DNA of 64,000 bases from the NCBI RefSeq assembly GCF_006345805.1, contig NC_042999.1, forward strand, positions 60,760,001 to 60,824,000, written 5' to 3'. Both the position numbers and the translations under genes were made by a program. The notes below the pieces were generated by a model. That model was not told the DNA's origin and did not search any database. It saw only the letters and a list, made by a program, of their open reading frames with translations. Each line of letters begins with the position of its first letter. The first letter of the stretch is position 1. Below are positions 4,931-56,093 of the stretch, in pieces. Source of the DNA: Octopus sinensis (lineage: Eukaryota).

Positions 4931-6486
4931 GTTTGAAACTCAGACTACCAAGGCGTTACATACATGTAACTCCCAATGAATATGTTGAATGTCTTTCTTT
5001 CATTTGTCTACTCGTGTGTATATATATATATGTATAGATAGATAGATCGATAGATATACGATGGGTTTCTTTTAGTTTCTGTCTAACGAATCCACTCAGA
5101 AGGCTTTGGCCGATGTTACAGTACTCTGAATCACGTGGTTGAGAAGCAAGTTTCTTACCACACAGCCAAAAAACATTTGTTTGAATAGCTGAAAATTTTA
5201 TGGGACATTGATACATCAATAGAGATAACGCGATGGGGGTAAGAATATAACAGCGATGTGGGAATTAAGGATGTTTGAAAAGAAAGCAAAGCAAAGGGAT
5301 AAGTTAAGGAAGTCAGGTGGGAAAAGAAGGAGTACCGATGAAGTATACCTGTATCGAAACGTTTTCAGATCTACGCGCATGAGTACACTATCGGCCGGAT
5401 GAGGATGATATTTAGCTTGAAAATATCAGATGATTTTCAAAGTGCTCGCATTTCCTGACAATTCTGTGATGTGTTAATTAGAGGTCTTATTTACATAGCT
5501 TTCTGGAGATTTTCCTATTAACTACTGTTGAAAGATCAAACTTTTTTTTTCCCATTGTTAGCACTTGTGTCTTTCAGTTATTTTCTGAATACTTTGGCAT
5601 TGCACATCATAATTTAATTATCGAATGTAGCCATTTAATATTATCGTTTTCATTCTTATATGTCTAAAAGAATATGAAGCTTTAGAAAGTATTTCTTGAT
5701 ATTTCTCTTGTCGTGCTTATATAGCGCTTAGGTGCCATTTCAACGTTTGGTTATACAGAAATGATGCCTGCCTCATAATATATCGTTTTGTTAATGTAGA
5801 ATGTAAGTTTCTATTAGTTTGCTGGAACGGGTATGGAGAATAGTAAATCTGGGTTGGTGGCTGCCATATTAAGTTCTCCATGTTTGTGGTGCAACTGTAG
5901 ATTAGCTTCAGATTATGTCTGCAAAGAGATCTATATGATGCGCAGGGATGGGTTTTATATATTAGCATTCTAATAAAGTGAAAGGGGAAGTGAAAAACGT
6001 TTGGGTAACTCGTTTCAGCTTTAGTTGAAGACGAGAATTAAGTTATGCACGTCATTTTATCTCAAACCGGTAAATCAATATCATAGTAATTGTTTTAGAG
6101 GGCAGACTGCAAATGCACCTACTAATGATATAGATGCGGTTCTTAAAACATGTTACAAGTCCCGAAGAAAAAATATTTTCTATGGGACATGTTATTGATT
6201 CAGTTGTTAGATCCGAGGGTAATGTTAGCCCTTAAAATATAATGTAATGACAACTGATTGAGCAATTGGTTATATATGCTTGAAAGTTCAATGTTCTAAA
6301 ATTTTAGGTGTTGTCTTTAGATAATGTCATCTTATAATTAGCGTATTTGATTTTTCATATAGGAAACCCGTCATTTTTGCAAAGCGCGCACACTATAGTA
6401 GTGTTTCTGAGGCATAATCCTACAAGATTACATATAGATGAGCACTCTTATAGCCCTAGACCGGTATGAAAGAAGGATATACCGAA

Positions 6487-6967: not shown

Positions 6968-7243
6968 CATCATGGCCAGTTCAAAATGCCCGCCGTTTAA
7001 TTCCATATGCAATATGGTCAAAATATCGCCGCAGTAAATACGGTGACGAAATAAATTTAGATTTATATAAATAAGGATAAGATCGTTAATTTAAAAATAA
7101 AACAACGATTTAATCAAGTGGTCAGCATGGAAAAAATAACCTTCAAAGGTAATAATTATTAAAATTATAAATTAAGGGATCTACGAGGTACCACCATGCT
7201 GAAAATAGCAGCCATGATCTGACTCTTTGAACTGGCCATGATG
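6968..7243. mobile_element. MITE-like element with 18-bp terminal inverted repeats
   Basis: CATCATGGCCAGTTCAAA (6968-6985) and TTTGAACTGGCCATGATG (7226-7243). An internal ~55-bp segment recurs at ~6668-6725. No clear TSD. Confidence 0.5.
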
Positions 7244-7757: not shown

Positions 7758-8209
7758 TGTTTTTATTATGGCCACACGGGGCTAAACACAGTAAATAGAC
7801 GAAATACAATGTAGAGTTTTCCTTTTCGAGGTGGGATGGGTGGGACACATAAAAGAAAATGTCCGGTCAATAGGGATCGTTGGGCTGTGTTATTTACAAA
7901 AAGGAAAGACATATATAAATATTTAAAGTTCCAAAAAAAGTGGCGGGAACGATATTGTTTACAGTTTAGGTGTAGCCTTGGAAAGAAAAACCTATAACAA
8001 AGACCAAGGTTACCTCAGGCAGTTCAAAGTGTCCATAAGAGTAAGAACCTTTCCTCTCATTTTCTCTTTTTGTTACAGATTTATGCTTAAAATGGTGCCG
8101 TCCTTTATACTGACCATTCCTGCCAGATTTACCCATTTTTTATTGAAACTTTCATTCGACAATATTTTTCCTCTCTATTCTCATCCATCTTTTCAAGTGG
8201 TACTTGAAA
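7758..8209 (-). mobile_element. 5'-truncated Tx1-like LINE (ORF2 C-terminus plus 3' UTR) in (TCTA)n
   Basis: Reads FKYHLKRWMRIERK..KKWVNLAGMVSIKDGTILSINL*. Homologous to 48772-49377. (GATA)n on both sides. Confidence 0.7.
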
Positions 8210-8902: not shown

Positions 8903-9097
8903 GGCGGCGAGCTTTCTGAATCATGAAGCACGCCCGACAAAATAATTAACAACATTCCGTCCGTCTTCATGCTCTAAGGTTAACTTTGCCTTCCAACCCT
9001 TCGAGATCGATAGAATAATCACCAATTGAGCACTAAGGTTGATGTAATCAACTTCCTCCTTCTCCAAAATTGCTGAACTCACGCCAAAAGTTAAAAC

Positions 9098-9098
<1 letters not shown>
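8903..9098 (+). mobile_element. Degenerate SINE-A copy
   Basis: ggcggcgagct..gttaactttgccttccaacccttcgagatcgatagaataa, followed by an (ATT)n tail. Confidence 0.65.
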
Positions 9099-9130
<32 letters not shown>

Positions 9131-9142
9131 CATTATTATCAT

Positions 9143-9207
<65 letters not shown>

Positions 9208-9349
9208 CAAGTATTACTAGTACTATTGCTGCTGCTGCGCTGCTGCCACAACCACTCCTACTACTATTACTACTACTACTACTGCTACTACTACTACTAC
9301 TACTAATAATAATAATAATATAATAATAAATAATAATAATAATATAATA

Positions 9350-9403
<54 letters not shown>

Positions 9404-9509
9404 CAACAGTAACAATAATAATAAGACGAAGAAGAAGAAGAAAAAGAAGAAGAAGAGGAAAAAATATCAATAGTAAGATTAGCAGTAGCTGTTGTAGCAG
9501 CAGCAGCAC

Positions 9510-9572
<63 letters not shown>

Positions 9573-9792
9573 GAGGAGGAGGAGGAGGAGGAGGAGGAGG
9601 AGGAGGGCGAGAAGCAGCAGCAGCAGTATTGTACTTTTGAGTCAAGCGAAGACTCAGGCGCCGAGGTTGACTTTGAGTTTCATATTTTCGAGTTCGATAA
9701 AATAAGTACGAGTTGAGTACTGGGGTAGGGATACCCAGAATCCAAGTCTCGTGTCTATTAGCAGAAATTATTATTATTATTATTATTATTAT

Positions 9793-9860
<68 letters not shown>

Positions 9861-9861
9861 T

Positions 9862-9893
<32 letters not shown>

Positions 9894-9910
9894 TTATTAT
9901 TATCATCATT
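9099..9910. repeat. Large compound trinucleotide array (ATT, AGT, ACT, AAT, AAG, AGG, AGC) with an embedded SINE-like segment at ~9625-9765
   Basis: Directly visible; source of the poly-amino-acid ORFs in the track. Confidence 0.9.
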
Positions 9911-11231
9911 ATTTTCGCTTTATCATAAGTTTTGTTGGAGCTCCTGGAGTTTCGACTACCAGCAGCCTTCACTACTCCGAGAAGCTCATGTTTCTCACCG
10001 ACCACTAGACTTGTATATATTGCTACCATAAACCTGCCACCGATTGTAAAGCTTGACTTGTAGAGAGTAGTGAGCGGCGAGTTTCTCCTCTCCTTATCTT
10101 AGTCTGATATCTACTCTCACTTTCTACATACTTACACTCACATAAATTCACGCACACACACACACATTCACCTATACATATGTATGTATGTATCATTGTA
10201 TAAGACAGGTTTTGCTGTCTTACATTGATCGAAGCTACAGTAGAAAAGTATTTACTGAAAGTATCACATACTGTGATAGATCTAGGATCATCGTAGTTGC
10301 AAAGCGAACATCTTAGCTACGTAGCAATACACTAGCTTGTACTTTACACATATGCACTGAGAAAAAAAAGATGTCATTTCTGCTACGAAATGTAAGCAAT
10401 ATCATACCCCGTTTCCTGCTTTTTACATTTCTCCTTTCCTCTAAATGTCTTCATCACAAAGTAATATATTCGTTTCTAAATCTCAGCATTATTGCTTTTC
10501 CAGAAGATCAGACAAAAATGTTCATATTAAATTTATTGTTTATGTTATTGCAATATAATTTAATGGTTTTGTTTTATTTAACTTAACTCGACAGGTGCAG
10601 TGTCCATGAACAACATCAAGTAATATATGCATCTCTTATGGAAGTTTATGCTCCAAGACTTACCAGTAAAAGAAATTTTGCCAAAGTTATATTTTATTCG
10701 TATCTGCGTGACGTTTTAAGGAGAATACACTATCACAACAATATTTATATGATGTAAGATTTTAATGCAAGTTCATTCGTCATAATTTAGCCTGGAGTCA
10801 TGTTCCTCGTAGCTATAGCATTGGCAAAGTTAACAACTGAAGTAGGTTTTGTTCTTTATTTTCTACAGAAACTTTCAACTTTTCGTATGCAAATGTAAAT
10901 TATAAATCTCTCAGATATAAAAACAAACCATTGGATATACAAAAGATAAGGTGACTACCATCTGTTTTATTATGTTACTGTTTATTATCGTTATCACAGA
11001 GATATAAAATCTCGATTGTTCAAACGTTGAAGAAAGTTGTTCGAACTATAGTTTGATATATCGAAGTGTAAGACAATCAGAATGCAACAATTATGGAAAA
11101 TAAATCACTCTAAGTTAAATAAAACACTTATATGTGACCATTGCCAGAGATCATTTTAAAAATGATTGCATTTTCTACTTTGCGAGAAGTGCCTTATGGA
11201 GAAATAACAGACGATATGTACGAATCTTGCG

Positions 11232-11665: not shown

Positions 11666-11864
11666 TAAAAGTCACAGTGAAATTGGAAAACAAATTATCT
11701 TTAACAATAGCAACATCCCTATAAGTTATTTACGCGAAAGTAAATGTTAGGTTTTGTCATATGTGATGATTACTCCAAGTGATGTAACATATACATTGCC
11801 CAAACCGCATTCCCGTATTTGAAACTATCTTCATGTTTAGACAATACTTGCTCACCGTTTACAA

Positions 11865-12330
<466 letters not shown>

Positions 12331-27100: not shown

Positions 27101-28310
27101 AATTGTGTATACATGAAGCTGATAGCATCATGAGAATTAGAAAAGTGCTTCGCGGAAGTTATTCCTTTGTCTATGATCAACTGTACACACTCACCGAAAA
27201 TTTGCACAGTGCTAACAGATTGGCAGATGAAAGCTATGTGCATAACAGCAGAAGATCATGCATATTTGTATTATCTGAAAGTTTCGAATTGACAGAAACA
27301 AAGATAAGATACAAAAACTGAATGTTATCTTTCGTTGTCAAGAGCACGGTTTTGCAAACCAGGAACAAGAAATAACGCTGAAATATCTGATACACAAAAG
27401 GGTTTAATCACCCAAATAGAAAACCTGGATGTGACAAACGATACAGACATTGTGGAATTTATAGTTATATCGTAAGCAGATACACAGATATTTCATAAAG
27501 ATCTCTTAAAATATAGTTCGTGGAGAGAATGCTCCGAAAATAAAACATACACGTTATAGCGATCTGTATGAAGTAATCGCTCTTAATATGATATAGCACA
27601 GGAGAATGTCTCTGTAAAAACTTCAATAAAAGGAAAGTGTGAAAGAGTAGATATAACAATGTGGATCATTGAAGAGAAATTGGGCATAGTAGCGGAAATT
27701 AAGTATTCAGATGTTAATACATTATTAACGATTAATGAAACACAAGGATCTAAGGAAAAATTGAGAAACATTCCGATATAATAAACCGACTATATCTTTC
27801 GATTTATATCCGTAATTATTGGAACGATTGCATGCATATATTTAACTAACTCCGTAGCAATTTTGAGAAGATGAGATTCACAAATTCAGGAAGGAATTAA
27901 TTATTATGAAATTACAGGCTTGCACCATTAATACGGCTTGTAAATTTGTAAACCTTTCCACAAGATTAGCATTAAATAATAAAAAATACAAATATGAGAT
28001 TATCTTGATCATGGGCATGCCAAAATAATCTCATTGAATGTGAGCAAATGAAGTTTGCTTTTTAAACATAGTCATCGTTGCGTTCCACACAATTCTTCGA
28101 ACCGTGCTTGCAGTGCTTGCAGTGCTTGGATCCTATTGGCGAAGAGGTATTCATCCCGCTGGACTAAAATGTCATCAACAGTAAATATGAAGCCATTATC
28201 ACTGCGATACTACTTTCCAACGAAGAGTGTTGGGGGAGCAGATGTTAATCAAATAGGGCTAAATCAAGGGAATAGGGAGGGGGACCCAAAAGATCAAAGC
28301 CACAGTAATG

Positions 28311-28486
28311 ACTAGCTGTGTAGTAAGTAGCTTGTTTATCAACTACATGGTTCCGGGTTCAGTCCCACTGCGTGGTACCTTGGGCACGCGTCTTCTATTA
28401 TAGCCTCGGGCCGACCAAAGCCTTGTGAGTGGATTTGGTAGACAGAAACTGAAAGAAGACCGTCGTATATATGTATATATATATTA

Positions 28487-36196: not shown

Positions 36197-36392
36197 CCAC
36201 ATATATATATATATATATATATACATACATACATACATACATACATACATACATACATACATACATACATACATACATACATACATACATACGAGGGGCT
36301 TCTTTCAGTTTCCGTCTAACAAATCCACTCACAAGGGTTTGTTCGGCCCGAGGAATGAACCCGGAAACATACGGTTGGTAAGCAAGATACTT
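35945..36392 (-). mobile_element. 3' part of a SINE-B split by two ORF1-only elements
   Basis: Minus strand resumes aagtatcttgcttaccaacc..ccgggttca..gtgagtggatttgttagacggaaactgaaagaagccc; the head is at 40490-40523. Confidence 0.85.
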
Positions 36393-38437
36393 TATTTCAT
36401 AAAAATTGTTATATACACAGTACAAAGATTGTGTAGCTTTGCGGGCTGGACAAACACATTAATGAATGAAAATGAAATAAAATGAATAAATGAGAGACGA
36501 AACCCAACACCCACCGATTGGATTTTTCTTGAAAACATATTTTTTTTTAAAAATCAATATGATGTTTCAAACCTCTTACAAGAAGGAGGAACTAAAACCT
36601 CTTACTTAATATGTTTTTTTAAACACACAATTGAGGTTATAAACCACAACAAATAATACAATAAGATCAGGTTCCCAACCCTCTAACGAGACTTTTTCAC
36701 CTCCTACTCATCGATATATCCATCGATATATTCATCGCTATCTTCAATGCCGCTTGATCCCTGTATCACGCCATGTCCCATGCCTCACTTATGTAGGACA
36801 TGTAAATCGTGTAAGGCCCACCCGGCTATATGCGACATTCCTCCCCAAATCCTTTAAGCCTTTCCCATAAGGGAAACCTTATGACCTCCACAGCTCTCTG
36901 CGGAGGCCATTCGGGATCTCGTGTGAATGGCATATCTACTGTCTCTTTATGTTCTATTTTTTCCACATCCCCGCCCTTGTAGAAAAAGATAATTAATTCA
37001 TTATCTGTAAGGGTGGGGATCGTTTCTTCCACCGTGGGTGGCACAACTTCGGGACATGCAGACGGCACATCATCTCCCCCCCCTGCGATGACTCGTTCTT
37101 CTTCTTTCTTTTCATTCTTTTCTTCCTGACTTCGGGACAGTAGAGCACTTCCGCCTTGTCCGGAGTCTCTCACCCACCTCCCGAAGCCTTAGGGTTTCCC
37201 ACCTTCCTTTTTAATCCTTTTTGGGTTGAGGAGGCTTGAACCTCATCCACCTCTCCATTTGACCGGGTAGGGGATGTGGCATCCAGTGACTGTTTCACGA
37301 CCTTACCCAGGTCCAGGGGGCAGTTCTTTTTAATGTGACCTGGCTGCAAACGCGGGTGACACTTGGTGGGGACGTCCCTCAAGTATCACTGGATACATAC
37401 AGCCAGCCATTTCAAACAAAATCTGGAAAAACCAGATCTGTTGCTGCCGATGGTGTCCACAGGGTCAAAATCGCTTTTGACCCTTCCCAATTGACCGCCG
37501 GAAATAACCTTACATTTAAGAGCCTGGGCCCGCTATCCCCCAGTCGCCGTCAGATGGTATATTTAATCCAACCCGATTCGGTGCCTTGGGGCAACCAACA
37601 TACCCAGGCTCTTATTAATTTTCTCCCGCAGTACGACGTGAGGGGAACAGAATTTCGTTGCCCTCTAAATGCTGACTCGCAATGTGCGAGCCTTTTCTCG
37701 GTTGTCAAACATGACCCCACGGGATATGTATTTCACAGAGGACAAATAGTCTTTCAGTTTATTTCCCATAACTGGTTTTGGGAAGACGGTGATGGAATCA
37801 AGAACTTTAGAATAAGTTCTAACCCCCCGTCCTCTTCTCCATATCTTTTAACCACTGCTTAGGCGGGTTAATTTCCCATTGTAAGGCAGAGATTCTTCTT
37901 TTTAAGTTCCTTTTCTGCCATGTCCAAAAAAATCAGTTCAAAAGTAGTTCGAAAGACAGTCCGCCAAAAAATTAAAACTGAATAAAAATAGAAGTAAAAC
38001 AAAATAAAAGAGAAGGAAAGGAAACTGAAATTGAAATAATGAAAAAAATGAACCAAAATTTAGAAAGAAAGAAGAAAAATAGAACGGAAAAATAAAAGAA
38101 AAACCTCACAAATAGAACAGACAGGGAATCCTTTGTATAATACTCCAACAGATAATCCACTAGTGTGGGTTATTCTTGAAGTACTCCAGTTAGGTAAAAT
38201 TCCACTTTTTCTAGGGAGATGCACACTAAAATTTACAAATTATTTGGCGAAAACAAGCCACACCAAAAATTCTTAATTCACCGTTATGGTGATGAGAACG
38301 CAATATTTTTGCTCGCTATAGCGAGCCGTAATTGACAATTTTTCTTTCTGTCCTTTTTTCTATTCACGGAGCCAAAACTCACGTCTTCTCTCTGTAACAG
38401 TCCAGACCAACAAGTGTTGCATTCTGGGTAACCGGAA
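36393..38437 (-). mobile_element. ORF1/gag-only non-autonomous retroelement E1 (decayed), ~2.05 kb
   Basis: Bounded by target duplication copies at 36378-36392 and 38438-38452. Ends in aaataaa. Contains a frameshifted homolog of the E2 ORF and no RT. Confidence 0.8.
36826..37921 (-). pseudogene. Disrupted ORF1/gag-like CCHC protein
   Basis: Reconstructed across frameshifts and a stop: QWEINPPKQWLKDMEKRT..VFPK..GRKLIRAWVCWLPQG..NWEGSKAILTLWT..YPVILEGR..GHIKKNCP..FYKGGDVE..PEWPPQRAVEV. Clearly homologous to 38739-39926. Confidence 0.85.
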
Positions 38438-38452
38438 GTAAGCAAGCTACTT

Positions 38453-40489
38453 TATTTTAATAATTTGCCACTAGGGCAGCACACAGAGTAGCTGCGGGCT
38501 GGACAAGGACATTAATGGATGATGGTGGTGGTTGATGAAGATGGTAATGGGAGAAGTCAGAAAGCGCCCGCCGATTTTTGCTTCTCTAAAACAATGTTCT
38601 TTTTTTCAATAATTTACAAAATTTCAAAAATTACAAAAATTCAAAAAATTTTCACAAAAATTTCAATTTACAATTTACACTTCTAAAAGTCTCTTCAGAG
38701 GCAATAAACCTCTGTCACAATGTAACACAATTACAATTTTACGTTACCCGACCGATGAACTCTCTTGCTTTAATGACGTAATCGTCCATTGTCAAGCTTC
38801 CGCATACAGGTATGACTTGCAAGAGATCCTCCGGGAAAGAATTCTCGATCCTGCACATATCATTTTCGAGTAGGACCTCCGCAGCCAGCTGCGAAGGCCA
38901 CTCGGGATGCTCCATGCAGGACCGAAGTCCCTCCCATTGGTTTCTCTTCCTCCTCTTACGTATTTCATTTTCTACAGTGCCTCCTTTATGGAAGAGGACT
39001 ACATAAAATTTCTCCGGCATCACAATCGCCGGAGGACACATGGGAGACGCCATCTGGGTGTTACAGTCCGCTGGTGGCGTCCCGTTCCTCTTTTTCTTTC
39101 TCTTTTTACGCTGGGCCTCGGGAGGTTGAGGTTCCGGTGCTATACGCACCGGGTCCTCTTTTTCTTCCGAAGCCTCCGGTTCCTTTTGTGGGTTGCCATT
39201 GCTCCCCACTCTTCTTTTTCTTTTGGAGGAGGACCTTTCCCCCTCCTCACTCTGTTTCTCTCCCTCCATTGGTGGGGCAGGGAGAGGCTCTGATATTAAC
39301 CTCTCCAGGATCCTACTCTGGCTCCTGGGGCAGTTTTTCTTAATGTGGCCGGTCTCCGAACACAGGTGACACTTGGGGGCGCGTCCCTCAAGCATCACCG
39401 GATACTTGGATCCGGCCATCTTCAGGAAGTCCGGCAAAACCAGACTCTTGGCCGACTGGGTCCACAGAGTCAAAGTAGCCTTTGCCCCTTCCCAGTCAGC
39501 CGCAGGCTGTATTCTCACGTTCAGGATCTTGGCTCTACCACCACTCAGACCCCGGCGGATGGAATCTTCCACCCACTCGGGTTCAAAGCCGGGCGGCAGG
39601 CCGCAGACCCGTAAACGTATCAATTTTTCCCCCTTATAGCTTGGGAGAAACAGAATCTCTTCGCCCTCAATGGGCCTACTCGCGAAATCGCAAGCTGCTT
39701 TAGGGGAGTCAAACAGCAGCCAAATCGTGGCGTATTTGACTCCCCGTTGAATATGTTTTACGGCTGGCATACAGTCTGTCAGCTCGTTCATGATGGTGGC
39801 TTTTGGGAAAACCATTATGGAATCGAGCGACCTCGAATATGTCCTCAACACCACGGTTCTGTCCTCGAGCTCCTTTAAGTACTTTTTGGGAGGTGTTAAT
39901 TCCCACACTGTGAAATTCCTTGCCATAACGTAAGAAAAACAGTTCAAAATGTTACAAAATAAATTAGACACAGAAAGGAGAATGAAAAAAGCAACAGAAG
40001 GGAAGAAATAAAACTAAAATGGCAGTTCAAAAAAAGTTCTTTTTTTTTTACAAATGAATGATAGACGGAGAAAGAGAGTTCAAATTCAGACAAAGGAATT
40101 ATTTTTTCTTTTCTTTTCACTTTTTCGGCCAAAAATTGTATTCCAGGCCAAATACACTGTTGGTGAAACACCTTGGTAAAGTAATCCTTGGTAAATCCCG
40201 TGGATAACACAAGGACAATTTCAAAATATAATTTTTGCAGACGTACTACGCCGCCTCAAAAACACAATTTTCTTCACACCCGACAACAGGCAGAAAAATT
40301 ATATCCGGAGCAAAGTGGAGCCTTATTATCTGCTAAAAAAATATTTAATGCTAAAGAACATTAATGCAAGTAATAAAACTTCACTTTGCTCGCAAAAATA
40401 CAAAATTCCTACCTTTAGTCGAGTCGAAAGTTCAACAATTCACGTTGAAACAACGTGGAAACCGGAGCAGCAAAATAACACGTCCGAAC
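38453..40489 (-). mobile_element. ORF1/gag-only non-autonomous retroelement E2 (intact ORF), ~2.04 kb
   Basis: Flanked by AAGTAGCTTGCT at 40490-40501 and 38441-38452. ~560-nt T-rich 5' UTR, one ORF, ~290-nt 3' UTR ending aaataaa. No ORF2. Confidence 0.85.
38739..39926 (-). CDS. 395-aa L1/Tx1-type ORF1 (gag-like) protein: two putative RRM-like folds, CX2CX4HX4C knuckle, basic linker, conserved C-terminal segment
   Basis: Open frame from the ATG at 39926 (the track starts upstream at a GTG). Contains VMLEGRAPKCHLCSETGHIKKNCP and IRLRVCGLPPG. The RRM call is inference from Tx1 ORF1 architecture. Confidence 0.8.
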   Translation of the reverse strand: MARNFTVWELTPPKKYLKELEDRTVVLRTYSRSLDSIMVFPKATIMNELTDCMPAVKHIQRGVKYATIWLLFDSPKAACDFASRPIEGEEILFLPSYKGEKLIRLRVCGLPPGFEPEWVEDSIRRGLSGGRAKILNVRIQPAADWEGAKATLTLWTQSAKSLVLPDFLKMAGSKYPVMLEGRAPKCHLCSETGHIKKNCPRSQSRILERLISEPLPAPPMEGEKQSEEGERSSSKRKRRVGSNGNPQKEPEASEEKEDPVRIAPEPQPPEAQRKKRKKKRNGTPPADCNTQMASPMCPPAIVMPEKFYVVLFHKGGTVENEIRKRRKRNQWEGLRSCMEHPEWPSQLAAEVLLENDMCRIENSFPEDLLQVIPVCGSLTMDDYVIKAREFIGRVT

Positions 40490-40523
40490 AGCAAGCTACT
40501 TACCACACAGCCACTCCTGCGCC
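40490..40523 (-). mobile_element. 5' head of the split SINE-B
   Basis: GGCGCAGGAGTGGCTGTGTGGTAAGTAGCTTGCT, compare the intact copy head at 56060-56093. Confidence 0.9.
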
Positions 40524-43056
40524 TGTATTATTCGTGTAAATATACATTTATTCGGTGTGTATGTTATAAAGTGTGTTATATAACCTGCACATCTTCAAAG
40601 CCAAAGATCTATGCTATGTCTCTAATCTAATATACACATATACATGAATTAAAAATTGCTTCGAAAATGCTACTTTAAGGGTTTTCTCCGGCTGGAAAAG
40701 ACATCCCTATGTATTTCGAGTATTACATTAACTACATTAGCATCTTATCACTTGAGGACGAAAGATAGATGTTTACCGAAACACTTTGGTTTCTACGTAA
40801 ATGTAATTGATTTACCCAGAGAAATTACATGCATATAAACAAGTATATTTAATAGTTGAGAAATATCTAGCTATTACTTGATCAAACTAACTATGTCTAT
40901 CAGTTCAGTTTATCTATCTCCCTACCTCATACACATACACACACACGCACACACATACACGTATACATGTTGTATATATATTTATGAATATGTAAATATA
41001 TGTACTTATATATATATATATATATATATACACATACGCACACACACACCCCTTATATATATATATATAAAGTTTTCGCTTATGTTAAAACTTAAAGATT
41101 CATGAGAAATATAATGCTAACAAGCTTTCAGTGGGATTAATTAGAACGCGGATGACCAAACATTTTTTCTTATATCAGTGATACATAATTTGACTGGAAG
41201 CATGTAAGCTGAACAACTCCGTTGACAAGAAATGAAGGTTACTGTTGTAAAGAGTGTAAACGTAATTTTACACTTTATGTATACACAAGTGCGCACGAGT
41301 GTTCGCATGCTGTATGCGTATGTATAGTTTAGCTTAAATTTTCAAAATTGGTATTGTTCACGTCATGTTGACTTATGTATATATACTTCAAATTACAAAA
41401 TGATTCGAGAAGTGTGAAGAAGTTAGTAATACCAAAACTTCATTGTAGCATGTTCTCAGTCGGATATTCAGTCGCCTGATATAAAACAAATTCATCGAAT
41501 GACCGCACCAATGAAATTTGAATATTCAATTTCGTATATGGTTGCGTAAACGTTCGGTCCACAACTGTTTGATAAATCAAAGTATTACACAAATATTTTG
41601 ATTGTGACGGTAAAAGATATCAATTCTGAACACTTACTCAGGATGGAATCTTTATGAAACAAACGCTTCGTAATATATTCTAAAAAATTTAATATCAATA
41701 TTTTCCAATAATAATATATATTTACACAAATATATATAGAAAGACTTGATAGATTTCTCGAAGCGTGAAGTTGTACATTAAACTGACCCTTAAATTTATT
41801 TGAACTTCAACTTTATAACCTCTGTATATCATATTAACTCCTGTAAAAAACACCTAAAAAGCTCCACGAGGCTCCGGCAGGGGATGGTGGTGATCCCTGC
41901 TGTACTCTTTCACCACTCTAAAAGGCGGTGCTCCAGCATGGCCGCAGTCAAATGACTGAAACAAGTACAAAAATAAAAAAAAAAATAGGATATGATCAGT
42001 TTCGGAATGCGTAACGTATTTAATATATAAAGTTGTTTATGATTTTTCATATCGTATACATTACTTTGAAATAAAAAATGTAACAAATCAATACAAATAA
42101 TTTCACTTTCTGCCTCACATGATAATATAAATGTTAAAAAAAACATATCTAATGCTAGTAAATCTCAGTCATAAAACTGGCTCAATCACTTAAGCAATAA
42201 ATAATGACTGTTATTCGAAATTGATGTGTTACGCAGATATATTTAGAGTTGTTAAATCAATATTTAACGAATATACTCCGCTAACTACATTTAAATCACG
42301 TTGTAATTAACATCGGCATTGTTTCAGAAATTCAATAAGGTTTATCAAGATACATATGAACTTTGAAGTTTAGCAAACGTGAAAACGAAATCGTTTAGAA
42401 TAACTTATGTACCAAGCATTACGATGGTTGAGTATTTTGTCTCTAAATGTGTGTGTGTTTATGTTTTTGTCTCTGTTTGTGTGGGAGTGCGCATGTGTGT
42501 GTATGTGTGTGACCTTGTGTGTGCATGTGTGTGCGTGTGTGCGGGCCGATGTTTGTGTTTGTGGGTCTCCTGTTTTGAATAATTATATGTTTGTAATTAT
42601 ACCTCTAAATATTCTTATATATTTTGAGTAACCACATGAGAGAAGCCGCACCAATCGTGTAACGTAATCTCCTGCACAAAACAATTGAAAACATTTTCTT
42701 CGGTTAACTTAAATAAATAGTAATTTTGAATTCTTATTTCAAAAAGACAAGAGATTATACATCGAATAACTTTATACAGTGAAGATTACCCAACAAATTC
42801 AACAGCTTTTGTAATTGAACACGTGCATGAACTGAATCTTGTTTAATATATTATATTATTCACTTCAAAATCAGATAAAAACTAAATGAACTATTGAAAC
42901 GTGAGTCATTTCTGCTTCAAATACAAATATTCAATTAATCTACGTATACTGATTTCCGCAAAGTAAGTTTACACAAAGATACATAGATATTTTTCTGTAT
43001 TGCATACGCACAGAAAGCTTCTAAGTATATACAGAGGTATATGAATATATACATAT

Positions 43057-48771: not shown

Positions 48772-49376
48772 AGTTTCTTTATTGGCCACACAGGGCTGCA
48801 CACAGATGGGACAAGTTATAAGGTAGAGCTTTTCTTTTGGGGGATGAAGAGAACAAAAAACAAAAGAAAAAAAAGGGGTGGCGTAGGTTTTCGATCAAGA
48901 GGGATCGTTAAAGGGAAGAAAAGAACAAAAAAAAGAATAAAAAGATAAAAAAGAAAAGGAAAAGCAACAGAAGAGAAGAGAAATGAAAAAAGAAGAAAAA
49001 AGGGGAAAAAAAGGGGAAGAGGAAAAAAAAAAGAACGATCAATAGGGATCGTGTATCATAGTGTTATGATATATGGTGTAAAGGGGAAAGCAAGTAAGGT
49101 TTATCCATGGGAAGAAAAGCCTACGAAAAAGACCACGGTAACCTTGGTCAATATTGTTATATGTTACCACATTTGTTTGCAAGTGGGTAACCCTGTGTTT
49201 TCAATTTCTGGGTTCATAGGATTATGCTCAAGGTGGCTTCGTCATTCATACGTGCCATCCTTGCTACATTCACCCATCTTTTTTTTAAAACATTCGCTAG
49301 ACAAAACTTGCCTCTCTACTCTCACTTTCCTCTTCAAGTGGTACTTGAAGAAGTTGATGAGGGATTGACCAGAGAG

Positions 49377-55663: not shown

Positions 55664-56093
55664 CTTTTACTCTTTTACTTCTTTCAGTCATTTGACTGCA
55701 GCCATGCTGGAGCACCGCCTTTAGTCGAGCAAATCGACCCCAGGACTTATTCTTTATAAGCCTAGTACTTATTCTATCGGTTTCTTTTGCCGAACCGTTA
55801 CGTTACGGGGACGTAAACACACCCGCGTCGGTTGTCAATGGAGGTTGTGGGGACAAACACACACACACACACACTCACATACACACACACACACAAACAT
55901 ATATATATATATATATACATACATATGTACGATGGGCTTCTTTTAGTTTCCGTCTACCAAATCCACTCACAAGTCTTTGGTCGGCCCGAGGCTATAGTAG
56001 AAGACACTTGCCCAAGGTACCACGCAGTAGGACTGAACCCGGAGCCATGTGGTTGGTAAGCAAGCTACTTATGACACAGCCACTCCTGCGCCT
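55664..56093 (-). mobile_element. Intact SINE-B (reference for the empty target site)
   Basis: ggcgcaggagtggctgtgtcataagtagcttgcttaccaaccacatgg.. through the tail aaaagagtaaaagagta. Confidence 0.9.

What the first reader, a model, noticed from the sequence alone, without database searches (positions are those of the whole stretch)
36381..40523. RT-less gag/ORF1-only retroelements inserted site-specifically and in tandem into a SINE head
Seen on the minus strand: SINE-B head GGCGCAGGAGTGGCTGTGTGGT-AAGTAGCTTGCT [E2, 2037 bp] AAGTAGCTTGCTTAC [E1, 2045 bp] AAGTATCTTGCTTAC-CAACC, then the rest of the SINE. Both 3' ends join the same base. The TSDs (15 and 12 bp) imply that E1 came first and E2 then inserted into E1's upstream TSD, which fits E1 being decayed and E2 intact. 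The two elements are diverged subfamilies, so this is not a local duplication. The site lies in a GGTAAG/CTTACC hairpin between the Pol III A and B boxes, so insertion should disable the SINE. Known: Tx1-clade LINEs are target-specific, and HAL1 elements are ORF1-only L1 derivatives. Inference: a HAL1-like, Tx1-dependent family that targets an abundant SINE.
Basis: partly seen in the sequence, partly recalled or inferred. Interest (0 to 1): 0.88.

Follow-up and report, generated by a model that had tools for sequence, protein, structure and literature searches.

The report
ORF1-only retroelements targeting an octopus SINE
Two 2-kb mobile elements that encode only a LINE-type RNA-binding protein (no reverse transcriptase) sit head-to-tail at exactly the same base of an abundant octopus SINE, and two more copies in another octopus genome start at the same spot, so this is a site-specific, non-autonomous retrotransposon family that parasitises another parasite.

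Summary
On the minus strand the order is: SINE head, 12-bp TSD, E2 (2037 bp, intact 395-aa ORF), 15-bp TSD, E1 (2045 bp, decayed), 15-bp TSD, rest of the SINE.

- **Independent copies.** Two E-family copies in Octopus sinensis were found by protein homology alone. Both also begin directly after the same SINE-head position. That makes 4 of 4 copies on target, all in SINE-sense orientation.
- **The protein.** It is RRM-RRM-CCHC plus a family-specific C-terminal domain. This is a type I LINE ORF1p, not a retroviral Gag.
- **Relatives.** Its distant homologues are the ORF1 of autonomous octopod LINEs carrying APE, RT and zf-RVT. Their ORF2 best matches human L1 ORF2p.
- **3' tail.** E2 ends in the same 3' tail module as those LINEs (TGTGT..GCCCTWGTGGC + AT-rich).
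- **What is absent.** There are no LTRs, TIRs, RT or ORF2 remnants.
- **Selection.** dN/dS between subfamilies is about 0.2.

Best reading: a HAL1-like, ORF1-only derivative of target-specific L1/Tx1-type LINEs, mobilised in trans.

Not shown: the partner itself, Tx1 clade membership, or the order of insertion, because both orders give the same structure. I rate it a new variant of known kinds, of moderate interest.

The parts
40502..40523 (-). 5' head of the host SINE (GGCGCAGGAGTGGCTGTGTGGT), upstream of the insertions
   Evidence: identical to the intact copies at 56071-56092(-) and 11864-11885(+) within 2 mismatches
40490..40501 (-). TSD-a, AAGTAGCTTGCT (12 bp), 5' target-site duplication of E2
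   Evidence: the same 12 bases recur at 38452-38441
38453..40489 (-). E2: complete 2037-bp ORF1-only non-LTR element (5'UTR 563 nt, ORF, 3'UTR 286 nt)
   Evidence: no LTR/TIR; no ORF2 remnant
38739..39926 (-). E2 ORF, 395 aa: two RRM-like domains (about aa 10-180), CCHC knuckle (185-200), basic disordered linker, family-specific C-terminal domain (about aa 300-395)
   Evidence: dN/dS 0.21 against the O. sinensis copy
39327..39374 (-). CCHC zinc knuckle (CHLCSETGHIKKNC)
   Evidence: PF00098, E 0.0011; invariant C/H columns in alignment A3
38453..38488 (-). E2 3' tail module CTCTGTGTGCTGCCCTAGTGGCAAATTATTAAAATA, shared with autonomous octopod L1/Tx1-type LINEs
   Evidence: GCCCTWGTGGS: the only match in the window, 0.02 expected; same module at the 3' ends of the L004, L008 and L009 LINEs
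38493..38522 (-). 30-nt box conserved between E2 and E1 3'UTRs (TCATCCATTAATGTCCTTGTCCAGCCCGCA); aligns to the same LINE tail module
   Evidence: family D9 (90% identity inside otherwise unalignable UTRs)
38438..38452 (-). TSD-b, AAGTAGCTTGCTTAC: its first 12 bases are E2's 3' TSD, and all 15 are E1's 5' TSD
36393..38437 (-). E1: 2045-bp decayed member of a different subfamily. The ORF is broken into at least 3 frames. The C-terminal domain is still recognisable (ORF 36826-37173).
36440..36469 (-). E1 copy of the conserved 3'UTR box
   Evidence: D9
36378..36392 (-). TSD-c, AAGTATCTTGCTTAC, 3' TSD of E1 (1 mismatch to TSD-b)
36291..36377 (-). Remainder of the host SINE (B-box-like GGGTTCA..., about 40-bp internal deletion, conserved GTGAGTGGATTTG..GACGGAAACTGAAAGAAGCCC end)
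   Evidence: one search compared
36200..36290 (-). (ATGT)n/(AT)n microsatellite tail of the SINE (extends below 36200)
   Evidence: D1
55930..56092 (-). Reference 'empty site': an intact SINE copy with uninterrupted ...GTCATAAGTAGCTTGCTTACCAACC...

Best explanation
E1 and E2 belong to an old, diversified family of non-autonomous non-LTR retrotransposons of octopuses. These elements have kept only the first reading frame of an L1/Tx1-type LINE. That frame encodes a type I ORF1p: two RRM-like domains, one CCHC knuckle, a basic linker and a family-specific C-terminal domain.

Their RNA is presumably coated by their own ORF1p. It is then reverse-transcribed in trans by the ORF2 protein (APE endonuclease plus RT) of a related autonomous LINE, which recognises the shared 3' tail (TGTGT..GCCCTWGTGGC followed by an AT-rich end).

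Insertion is by target-primed reverse transcription at one site of the abundant octopus SINE. The bottom strand is nicked at ...CTT|ACC... (top-strand GGT|AAG), inside the GGTAAG/CTTACC palindrome that lies between the A-box-like and B-box-like motifs. The top strand is cut 12-15 bp downstream. This gives a fixed 3' junction, a slightly variable 5' junction and 12-15-bp TSDs.

Each insertion regenerates the target in its TSDs, so a second element can land beside the first. That produces the E2-E1 tandem.

Shown: anatomy, TSDs, same-site insertion of four diverged copies, ORF1 homology, absence of ORF2, shared 3' tail, purifying selection.
Inferred: trans-mobilisation, the identity and clade of the partner, exact nick positions, and who inserted first.
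For: Anatomy and TSDs.

Chance excluded.

Four of four family copies abut the same SINE-head position in the same orientation (window E1 and E2; L001:9489; L005:15741). The O. sinensis copies were ascertained by protein similarity, not by their flanks. The four copies are only 67-72% identical to one another, so these are independent, old events rather than one duplicated locus.

No LTRs or TIRs. No RT ORF in 64 kb. No ORF2 remnants in E1 or E2.

Protein: zf-CCHC. AF2 with an MSA gives a confident model for about aa 10-220, and the Foldseek top hits are tandem-RRM proteins. No capsid-like hits.

Homologues at 22-28% identity are the ORF1 of elements whose next ORF has Exo_endo_phos + RVT_1 + zf-RVT. 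That ORF2 matches human L1 ORF2p at 3e-60, against R2 at 3e-23.

Related octopod LINEs are themselves target-specific or tandem. L004 is flanked by (ATT)n on both sides. L008 holds a head-to-tail array of at least 3 copies.

Shared 3' tail: GCCCTWGTGGS occurs once in the window, 14 nt from E2's 3' end (0.02 expected), and at the 3' ends of the L004 and L009 LINEs.

dN/dS is 0.21 between the E2 and L001 ORFs.

Literature: type I ORF1p in animals goes with Tx1 (PMC5203782). Tx1-clade families target other transposons, small RNA genes and microsatellites, and non-autonomous SINEU share their partner's target (PMC4494074). L1-Tx1 families are recently active in O. vulgaris and SINEs make up 11.6% of that genome (PMC13282606). 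HAL1 is an ORF1-only L1 derivative (PMC5753468).
Against: Only four copies could be examined, and only E1 and E2 show the 3' junction; L001 and L005 are 3'-truncated.

No autonomous element inserted at this SINE site was found, so the partner is hypothetical.

No RT phylogeny could be built, so 'Tx1' rests on ORF1 type, zf-RVT, L1-like ORF2 and target specificity of relatives.

E1's 3' end matches the tail module only through the upstream box.

The predicted 3' RNA structures are no more stable than shuffles.

dS is saturated (1.4), so the dN/dS value is rough. It could also reflect selection while the ORF still resided in an autonomous ancestor.

The C-terminal domain has no detectable counterpart in the LINE ORF1s.

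The SINE's tRNA ancestry was not confirmed.
Confidence: 0.75

Rival explanations
1. E1 and E2 are occasional internal-deletion (delta-ORF2) copies of a full-length, autonomous SINE-targeting LINE. They are not a self-propagating ORF1-only lineage.
For: Internally deleted LINE copies are common. The ORF1 and the 3' tail are clearly LINE-derived. HAL1 itself arose repeatedly from L1 (PMC5753468), so recurrent origin is plausible. The purifying selection could have acted in the autonomous parent.
Against: Three diverged copies (E1, E2, L005; 67-78% identity in the ORF, unalignable UTRs) share the same ORF1-then-3'UTR architecture. E1 and E2 have almost the same length, 2045 and 2037 bp. No trace of ORF2 sequence is left at the supposed deletion point. 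No protein from a full-length parent was returned by the protein searches.
Confidence: 0.12
2. The ORF is (or derives from) a host gene of LINE-ORF1 origin, in the manner of L1TD1 or ZCCHC3-like genes. On this reading E1, E2, L001 and L005 are processed retrocopies of its mRNA, made by a site-specific LINE.
For: NCBI annotates the L001 copy as a gene (LOC115225585). One Pfam hit among relatives is to a ZCCHC3 RNA-binding domain. E2's ORF is intact, and dN/dS is below 1.
Against: There is no poly(A) tail. The 3' end is a LINE tail module. The four copies are mutually 28-33% diverged with different 5'UTRs, which is not what copies of one gene would look like. All sit in a SINE with TSDs. Most are decayed: L001 has lost the first Cys of the knuckle and is truncated (alignment), and E1 and L005 have stops.
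Confidence: 0.05
3. This is a composite or rearrangement artefact. Either the SINE head is part of the element (a SINE::E chimera that moves as a unit), or the tandem arose by local duplication or assembly error.
For: All four copies have the SINE head immediately 5', as a chimera would. Repeats are prone to misassembly.
Against: E1 is preceded only by the 15-bp TSD, not by a head, and is followed by the exact continuation of the SINE. E1 and E2 are about 27% diverged with unrelated UTRs, so there was no duplication. SINE heads and outer flanks differ between loci and species. The same arrangement logic (re-insertion at a regenerated target) is seen in the L008 LINE array.
Confidence: 0.03
4. 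They are gag-only derivatives of an LTR retrotransposon or endogenous retrovirus.
For: A CCHC knuckle is shared with retroviral nucleocapsids.
Against: No LTRs or other terminal repeats. The fold is tandem RRM, with no capsid-like match in PDB or BFVD. Homologues are followed by APE-RT ORF2s, not by PR-RT-IN. TSDs of 12-15 bp and variable length are not integrase-like.
Confidence: 0.01

Closest known systems
HAL1 ('half-L1') of mammals
   Same: A non-autonomous LINE derivative that keeps only ORF1 and depends on a partner's ORF2p. It persisted as its own lineage(s) (PMC5753468, citing Smit 1999 and Bao & Jurka 2010).
   Different: HAL1 derives from mammalian L1, with a type II ORF1p (coiled coil, RRM, CTD; Transposase_22) and a poly(A) tail, and it inserts without site specificity. 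E has a type I ORF1p (RRM-RRM-CCHC), a specific non-poly(A) 3' tail and a single target site.
Target-specific Tx1-clade LINEs (Tx1L into Tx1D, Tx1-Mar into Mariner-N4_AMi, Keno into U2, Kibi/Koshi into microsatellites)
   Same: APE-type LINEs of the L1 superfamily that insert at defined positions of other repeats, including other transposons, in a fixed orientation and often in tandem. They carry a type I ORF1p (PMC4494074, PMC5203782).
   Different: Those are autonomous, whereas E has no ORF2. A SINE as the target was not found in the papers I could search. Clade membership of E's relatives was not tested phylogenetically.
SINEU / Tx1-Mar pair in crocodilians
   Same: Non-autonomous elements that share the exact target preference of their Tx1 partner. 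This was taken as evidence of trans-mobilisation (PMC4494074).
   Different: SINEU are short, non-coding, snRNA-headed elements, whereas E is 2 kb and protein-coding. For E the partner has not been found.
R2 SIDEs (short internally deleted elements of R2; from my own knowledge, Eickbush & Eickbush 2012, not checked here)
   Same: Site-specific non-autonomous derivatives of a site-specific LINE.
   Different: R2 uses a restriction-like endonuclease, has a single ORF, and SIDEs are non-coding. Their target is 28S rDNA.
Octopod L1/Tx1-type LINEs seen here (O. sinensis L004, O. vulgaris L008, Argonauta hians L009)
   Same: Homologous ORF1 (22-27% identity, same RRM-RRM-CCHC core) and the same 3' tail module. 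L004 sits in (ATT)n and L008 forms head-to-tail arrays.
   Different: They are 5-5.6 kb with APE-RT-zfRVT ORF2 and have other targets. Their ORF1 C-termini are unrelated to E's C-terminal domain.

Membership tests
Non-LTR (LINE-type) retroelement inserted by TPRT | No terminal repeats (LTR or TIR) | tested here: met
   within 36200-40700 the only long direct repeats are E1/E2 homology and the TSDs; no terminal inverted repeats
Non-LTR (LINE-type) retroelement inserted by TPRT | Flanking TSDs of variable length, with a precise 3' junction and a variable 5' junction | tested here: met
   12-bp and 15-bp TSDs, both 3' ends at |AAGTA. 5' junctions are GCT|, TTAC| and GCTTCC| in four copies
Non-LTR (LINE-type) retroelement inserted by TPRT | Encodes a reverse transcriptase and endonuclease (autonomy) | tested here: not met
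   one ORF only, with no RT/APE similarity. The element is therefore non-autonomous
Non-LTR (LINE-type) retroelement inserted by TPRT | 3' tail shared with an autonomous LINE (stringent-type recognition) | tested here: met
   for E2. For E1 only the upstream box aligns
HAL1-like (ORF1-only LINE derivative) | The ORF is homologous to a LINE ORF1p | tested here: met
HAL1-like (ORF1-only LINE derivative) | The ORF1-only structure is propagated, not a one-off deletion | tested here: inconclusive
   3 of 3 informative copies from diverged subfamilies lack ORF2, but n is small and no census was possible
HAL1 proper (mammalian L1 derivative) | Type II ORF1p (Transposase_22), poly(A) tail | tested here: not met
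   only zf-CCHC; tandem RRM; no poly(A). This is an analogue, not a member
Tx1 clade of the L1 superfamily | RT-domain phylogeny places the element, or its partner, in Tx1 | not testable with these tools
   E has no RT. No reference RT set was available, and the third protein search returned only unnamed ENA proteins
Tx1 clade of the L1 superfamily | L1-superfamily ORF2 (N-terminal APE, RT, C-terminal zinc-binding domain) in the relatives | tested here: met
Tx1 clade of the L1 superfamily | Type I ORF1p (RRM + CCHC) | tested here: met
   PMC5203782
Tx1 clade of the L1 superfamily | Sequence-specific insertion into a repeat | tested here: met
   4 of 4 E copies at one SINE site. Relatives: L004 in (ATT)n, L008 in tandem
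LTR-retrotransposon / retroviral gag-only element | LTRs, PBS/PPT, capsid fold | tested here: not met
tRNA-derived SINE (the target) | Head recognisable as a tRNA with A and B boxes | tested here: inconclusive
   By eye, TGGCTGTGTGG and GGGTTCAGTCC resemble A and B boxes, and GGTAAG/CTTACC forms a 6-bp stem with a 7-nt loop. However, ARAGORN and Rfam at E<=10 call no tRNA

The most novel reading that the evidence does not exclude
This is a long-lived, self-sustaining lineage of protein-coding 'hyper-parasites'. It has tracked one palindromic site (CTTACCA on both strands) of an octopus-specific SINE across several subfamilies. A single endonuclease specificity makes both nicks about 13 bp apart. 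The family-specific C-terminal domain of the ORF1p is what lets the element hijack a partner's ORF2p, or helps it find the SINE. Because each insertion splits the SINE's A-box-like and B-box-like promoter elements, the family could act as a natural brake on SINE source copies.
Probability: 0.15. Interest if true: 0.7.

Novelty: new variant of a known kind. Interest (0 to 1): 0.5.

Why it matters
ORF1-only LINE derivatives are so far textbook-known only as mammalian HAL1. Site-specific LINEs are known to target rDNA, small RNA genes, microsatellites and DNA or LTR transposons. An ORF1-only family that is also strictly site-specific, and whose safe harbour is a SINE, combines the two.

It offers a compact 2-kb natural system for three questions: what ORF1p contributes in cis when ORF2p comes in trans, how an APE-type endonuclease reads a 20-bp target, and how transposons nest in one another in the SINE-rich octopus genome.

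Practically, it explains at least two octopus 'genes' as element copies: LOC115225585, and the N-terminus of XP_029639579.

Tried and rejected
- Single-sequence AlphaFold gave a useless model (pLDDT 35). Only the MSA-based run was used.
- Rfam and ARAGORN gave no tRNA call for the SINE. The only Rfam hits near the locus are microsatellite look-alikes of mir-297 and similar families.
- RNA folding of the last 110 nt of E2, E1 and the L004 LINE is no more stable than shuffles (z about 0 to -1.2). I therefore claim no 3' hairpin.
- E2's C-terminal 112 aa shows no similarity to the C-termini of octopod LINE ORF1s.
- A profile search of PDB sequences hit only zinc knuckles.
- Two metagenome scans, one with the protein and one with a 3'-tail DNA pattern, found nothing related. 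The 2 DNA hits are chance.
- The third protein search (ORF2 of L002) returned only unnamed ENA proteins, so it gave no clade label.
- The Logan contig of P0003 (about 1.9 kb) looked like a possible second ORF1-only element, but it continues into an APE ORF2 start.
- My first tail-motif pattern was mistyped and found nothing.
- Literature searches found no description of a SINE-targeting or ORF1-only Tx1-like element in cephalopods. Repbase itself could not be consulted.

Full report
**1. The observation**

| Feature | Coordinates |
|---|---|
| SINE head GGCGCAGGAGTGGCTGTGTGGT | 40523-40502 |
| AAGTAGCTTGCT (TSD-a) | 40501-40490 |
| E2 (2037 bp) | 40489-38453 |
| AAGTAGCTTGCTTAC (TSD-b) | 38452-38438 |
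| E1 (2045 bp) | 38437-36393 |
| AAGTATCTTGCTTAC (TSD-c) | 36392-36378 |
| CAACC... and the rest of the SINE | to 36291 |
| (ATGT)n/(AT)n tail | below 36291 |

- Both elements end in ...AAATA and are joined to the same base.
- Uninterrupted copies of the SINE in the same window carry ...GTGGTAAGTAGCTTGCTTACCAACCACATGG... (56092-55930 minus, 28310-28470 plus). Joining the two flanks therefore restores an empty site.
- The head and target strings have no expected chance matches.
- E1 and E2 align only in and around the ORF, at about 73% column identity. Their UTRs are unrelated apart from a 30-nt box near the 3' end, so this is not a local duplication.
- E2 has an intact 395-aa ORF (39926-38739). 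It is the only substantial ORF in the whole 64 kb.
- E1's homologous ORF survives in at least three different frames.

**2. What organism and what target**

The only close protein match is an 'uncharacterized protein' of Octopus sinensis. More distant matches come from O. bimaculoides, O. vulgaris and Argonauta hians, so the window is octopod DNA.

The interrupted repeat is the abundant octopus SINE with a microsatellite tail. SINEs make up 11.6% of the O. vulgaris genome (PMC13282606).

The insertion site lies in a GGTAAG-N7-CTTACC palindrome, between an A-box-like TGGCTGTGTGG and a B-box-like GGGTTCAGTCC. That reading is by eye. ARAGORN and Rfam do not call a tRNA in the SINE, so I treat the Pol III promoter interpretation as plausible but unconfirmed.

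**3. Independent copies**

The O. sinensis protein P0001 maps to locus L001. A second, chimeric gene model (P0035) came from the exhaustive protein search and maps to L005. Both loci contain E-family elements.

- In L001 the element starts right after ...GGCATGGCTGTGTGGTAAGTAGCTTGCTTCC (L001:9489).
- In L005 it starts right after GGCGCAGGCGTTGCCGTGTGGTAAGAAGTTTGCTTCC (L005:15741).
- In both cases a SINE head, preceded by unrelated DNA, is followed by the element in SINE-sense orientation.
- These loci were found by protein similarity, not by their flanks, so the test is unbiased with respect to the target.
- All four copies are only 67-72% identical to each other and alignable mainly in the ORF. 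They are independent, old insertions from several subfamilies.

With SINEs at roughly a tenth of the genome and one position of about 170 in one orientation, I estimate the chance of four random hits at about 1e-12.

Both O. sinensis copies are 3'-truncated, so only E1 and E2 document the 3' junction. About eight SINE copies with an unoccupied target are present in the same roughly 160 kb. Most targets are therefore empty.

**4. What the element is**

There are no LTRs or terminal inverted repeats. TSDs of 12 and 15 bp, a fixed 3' junction and a 5' junction that varies by a few bases are the signature of target-primed reverse transcription.

The ORF has one Pfam hit, a CCHC knuckle. An exhaustive HMMER search found 62 relatives, 14 of them at E<=1e-10. 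They are mostly cephalopod proteins with the same core.

With an alignment of homologues, AlphaFold gives a confident model for residues about 10-220. Foldseek's best PDB matches are tandem-RRM proteins (hnRNP A2/B1, IMP3 RRM12, UP1). There are no capsid-like matches in PDB or in viral models.

The protein is therefore RRM-RRM-CCHC, followed by a basic disordered linker and a roughly 100-aa C-terminal domain. RRM plus CCHC defines the type I LINE ORF1p, which in animals goes with the Tx1 group (PMC5203782). 'Gag' is a misnomer.

**5. Link to autonomous LINEs**

The distant homologues are genuine ORF1s.

| Locus | Source | What is there |
|---|---|---|
| L002, L003 | ENA contigs | ORF1 homologue followed by an ORF with Exo_endo_phos + RVT_1, then a zf-RVT domain |
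| L004 | O. sinensis | P0012 followed by APE, RT and zf-RVT pieces |
| L008 | O. vulgaris | At least three head-to-tail full-length copies with a long open ORF2 |
| L009 | Argonauta hians | A full-length copy with a 16-bp TSD |

- The ORF2 aligns to human L1 ORF2p over APE plus RT at 3e-60, against 3e-23 for R2. These are L1-superfamily elements.
- L004 is flanked on both sides by (ATT)n, and L008 is a tandem array. Target-specific behaviour therefore runs in this group, as it does in the Tx1 clade (PMC4494074).
- L1-Tx1 is the only L1-type class listed among recently active LINEs in O. vulgaris (PMC13282606).

The 3' tail adds a further link. These LINEs end in a common module, TGTGT(n)CAGCCCTTGTGGC(n)A followed by 10-14 AT-rich bases, and E2 ends in CTCTGTGTGCTGCCCTAGTGGCAAATTATTAAAATA.

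- The core GCCCTWGTGGS occurs once in the 64-kb window, 14 nt from E2's 3' end (0.02 expected by chance).
- The same core occurs at the 3' ends of the L004 and L009 LINEs, and of two short elements in L009.
- The box conserved between E1 and E2 (TTGTCCAGCCCGCA) aligns to the same module.

E therefore shares both its protein and its 3' recognition end with autonomous octopod L1/Tx1-type LINEs. Yet it has no ORF2 and no detectable ORF2 remnant.

**6. Is ORF1-only a propagated state?**

E1, E2 and the L005 copy come from diverged subfamilies. All three run ORF, stop, 3'UTR, and E1 and E2 are almost the same length.

dN/dS between the E2 and L001 ORFs is about 0.21 (0.19 over the RRM-CCHC core). 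dS is saturated, so the value is rough.

The C-terminal domain motifs (..L.IFF.KGG.VE.. and DPEWPPQ.AVEV) are conserved among E copies. They have no counterpart in the LINE ORF1s.

This favours a HAL1-like lineage over sporadic deletion derivatives. With so few copies I leave that rival at about 0.12.

**7. Mechanism**

Shown:
- same-site, same-orientation insertion with TSDs;
- LINE ORF1 and LINE 3' tail;
- no RT.

Inferred:
- The element's RNA is bound by its own ORF1p and is reverse-transcribed in trans by the ORF2p of a related LINE. That LINE's endonuclease nicks the bottom strand at ...CTT|ACC... (top strand GGT|AAG; the A-run makes this ambiguous by up to 2 nt). The primer's terminal TT can pair with the RNA's terminal A residues.
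- The second nick falls 12-15 bp downstream.
- The palindrome puts CTTACCA on both strands. A symmetric second cut (GCTT|ACC) lies within 1-2 nt of the observed 5' junctions (GCT|, GCTTAC|, GCTT+CC). One specificity could therefore make both nicks, as R1Bm endonuclease cuts both strands of its target (PMC1919474). This is a low-confidence inference.
- Each insertion regenerates the target in its TSDs, so re-insertion produces tandems, as in the L008 LINE array.

**8.

- The TSDs do not fix the order of insertion. E1 first and then E2 into the upstream copy gives the same final sequence as E2 first (12-bp TSD) and then E1 into the downstream copy (15-bp TSD). Only E1's decay and the single mismatch in its TSDs suggest that E1 is older. 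A non-autonomous element can also be copied when already defective.
- 'Disables the SINE' is reasonable, because the A-like and B-like boxes end up 4 kb apart. It is untested, and it matters little for an already degenerate copy with an internal deletion.
- 'Tx1-dependent' remains an inference.

**9. Comparison and novelty**

Each ingredient is known:
- ORF1-only HAL1 in mammals (PMC5753468);
- Tx1-clade LINEs that target other transposons, small RNA genes and microsatellites, and non-autonomous elements that share their partner's target (PMC4494074);
- non-coding site-specific derivatives of R2 (from my own knowledge).

The combination was not found in the papers I could search: a protein-coding, ORF1-only, strictly site-specific family whose target is a SINE, in a cephalopod. 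I could not consult Repbase or Dfam.

I rate it a new variant of known kinds, with interest about 0.5. It is a neat and testable system, but not a new principle.

Noticed in passing
L004:9725-15375 (O. sinensis CM016872.1): A roughly 5.6-kb L1/Tx1-type LINE (ORF1 = P0012; APE, RT and zf-RVT pieces with frameshifts) is flanked on both sides by an (ATT)n microsatellite. It looks like a microsatellite-targeting LINE.
   Followed up: partly
L008:2440-17026 (O. vulgaris OX597840.1): At least three full-length LINE copies lie head-to-tail with a period of about 5.28 kb, and at least one ORF2 is open over about 1145 aa. The junctions read ...AAAACAC + TGATAA/CCGATA + GGACGTTACTTTG. This looks like a tandem array built by repeated insertion at a regenerated target.
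   Followed up: partly
L009:4500-4537 and 7100-7133 (Argonauta hians): Two short sequences end in the same tail, (C/A)AGCCCTTGTGGC(A/T)AATAGAGAAATC, as the full-length LINE at L009:7796-13243, which has a 16-bp TSD (TCTTCAACTTATGTTT). They may be 5'-truncated copies or SINE-like passengers of that LINE.
   Followed up: no
window 11864-11900 (+): This SINE copy reads ...GGCTGTGTGGTAAGT|ACATGGTTCC.... The 16 or so bases AGCTTGCTTACCAACC, which include most of the E target, are deleted. This may be chance or a footprint of an aborted or removed insertion.
   Followed up: no
window 49260-49375 (-) and 8146-8208 (-): Short fragments are similar to the C-terminus of the L004 LINE ORF2 (57-62% aa identity; E 1.7e-08 at 49260-49375, but only 0.008 at 8146-8208). 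The first begins directly after a (TCTA)n/(TC)n microsatellite, so it looks like a 5'-truncated L1/Tx1-type copy.
   Followed up: no
L001:10001-10846 and L005:10001-36638: Two O. sinensis RefSeq gene models are really E-family element copies. LOC115225585 is a truncated copy with the first knuckle Cys mutated. XP_029639579 ('K02A2.6-like') fuses 39 aa of an E ORF to an integrase fragment 20 kb away.
   Followed up: partly
window 5137-5167 (-), L004:8906-8950 (+), L004:21042-21060 (-): A second SINE subfamily carries AAGAA(G/A)CTTGCTTCTCAACC instead of AAGTAGCTTGCTTACCAACC at the target. The L005 insertion sits in a head of this type, so the family tolerates target variants.
   Followed up: no
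L002:14130-14330 and L003:7540-7740 (ENA sample ERZ21867824): The two LINE copies of this unidentified eukaryote share more than 200 bp of similar sequence beyond their apparent 3' ends (...TTTTAAGTAGG(T/A)CTT..CATAGAGCAAATGTGG...). Either the element is longer than assumed, or it too sits in a repeated target.
   Followed up: no
window 8921-10029: Long low-complexity ORFs (poly-L/I/S/T/P/Y) on the minus strand come from trinucleotide repeats. They are not genes.
   Followed up: no
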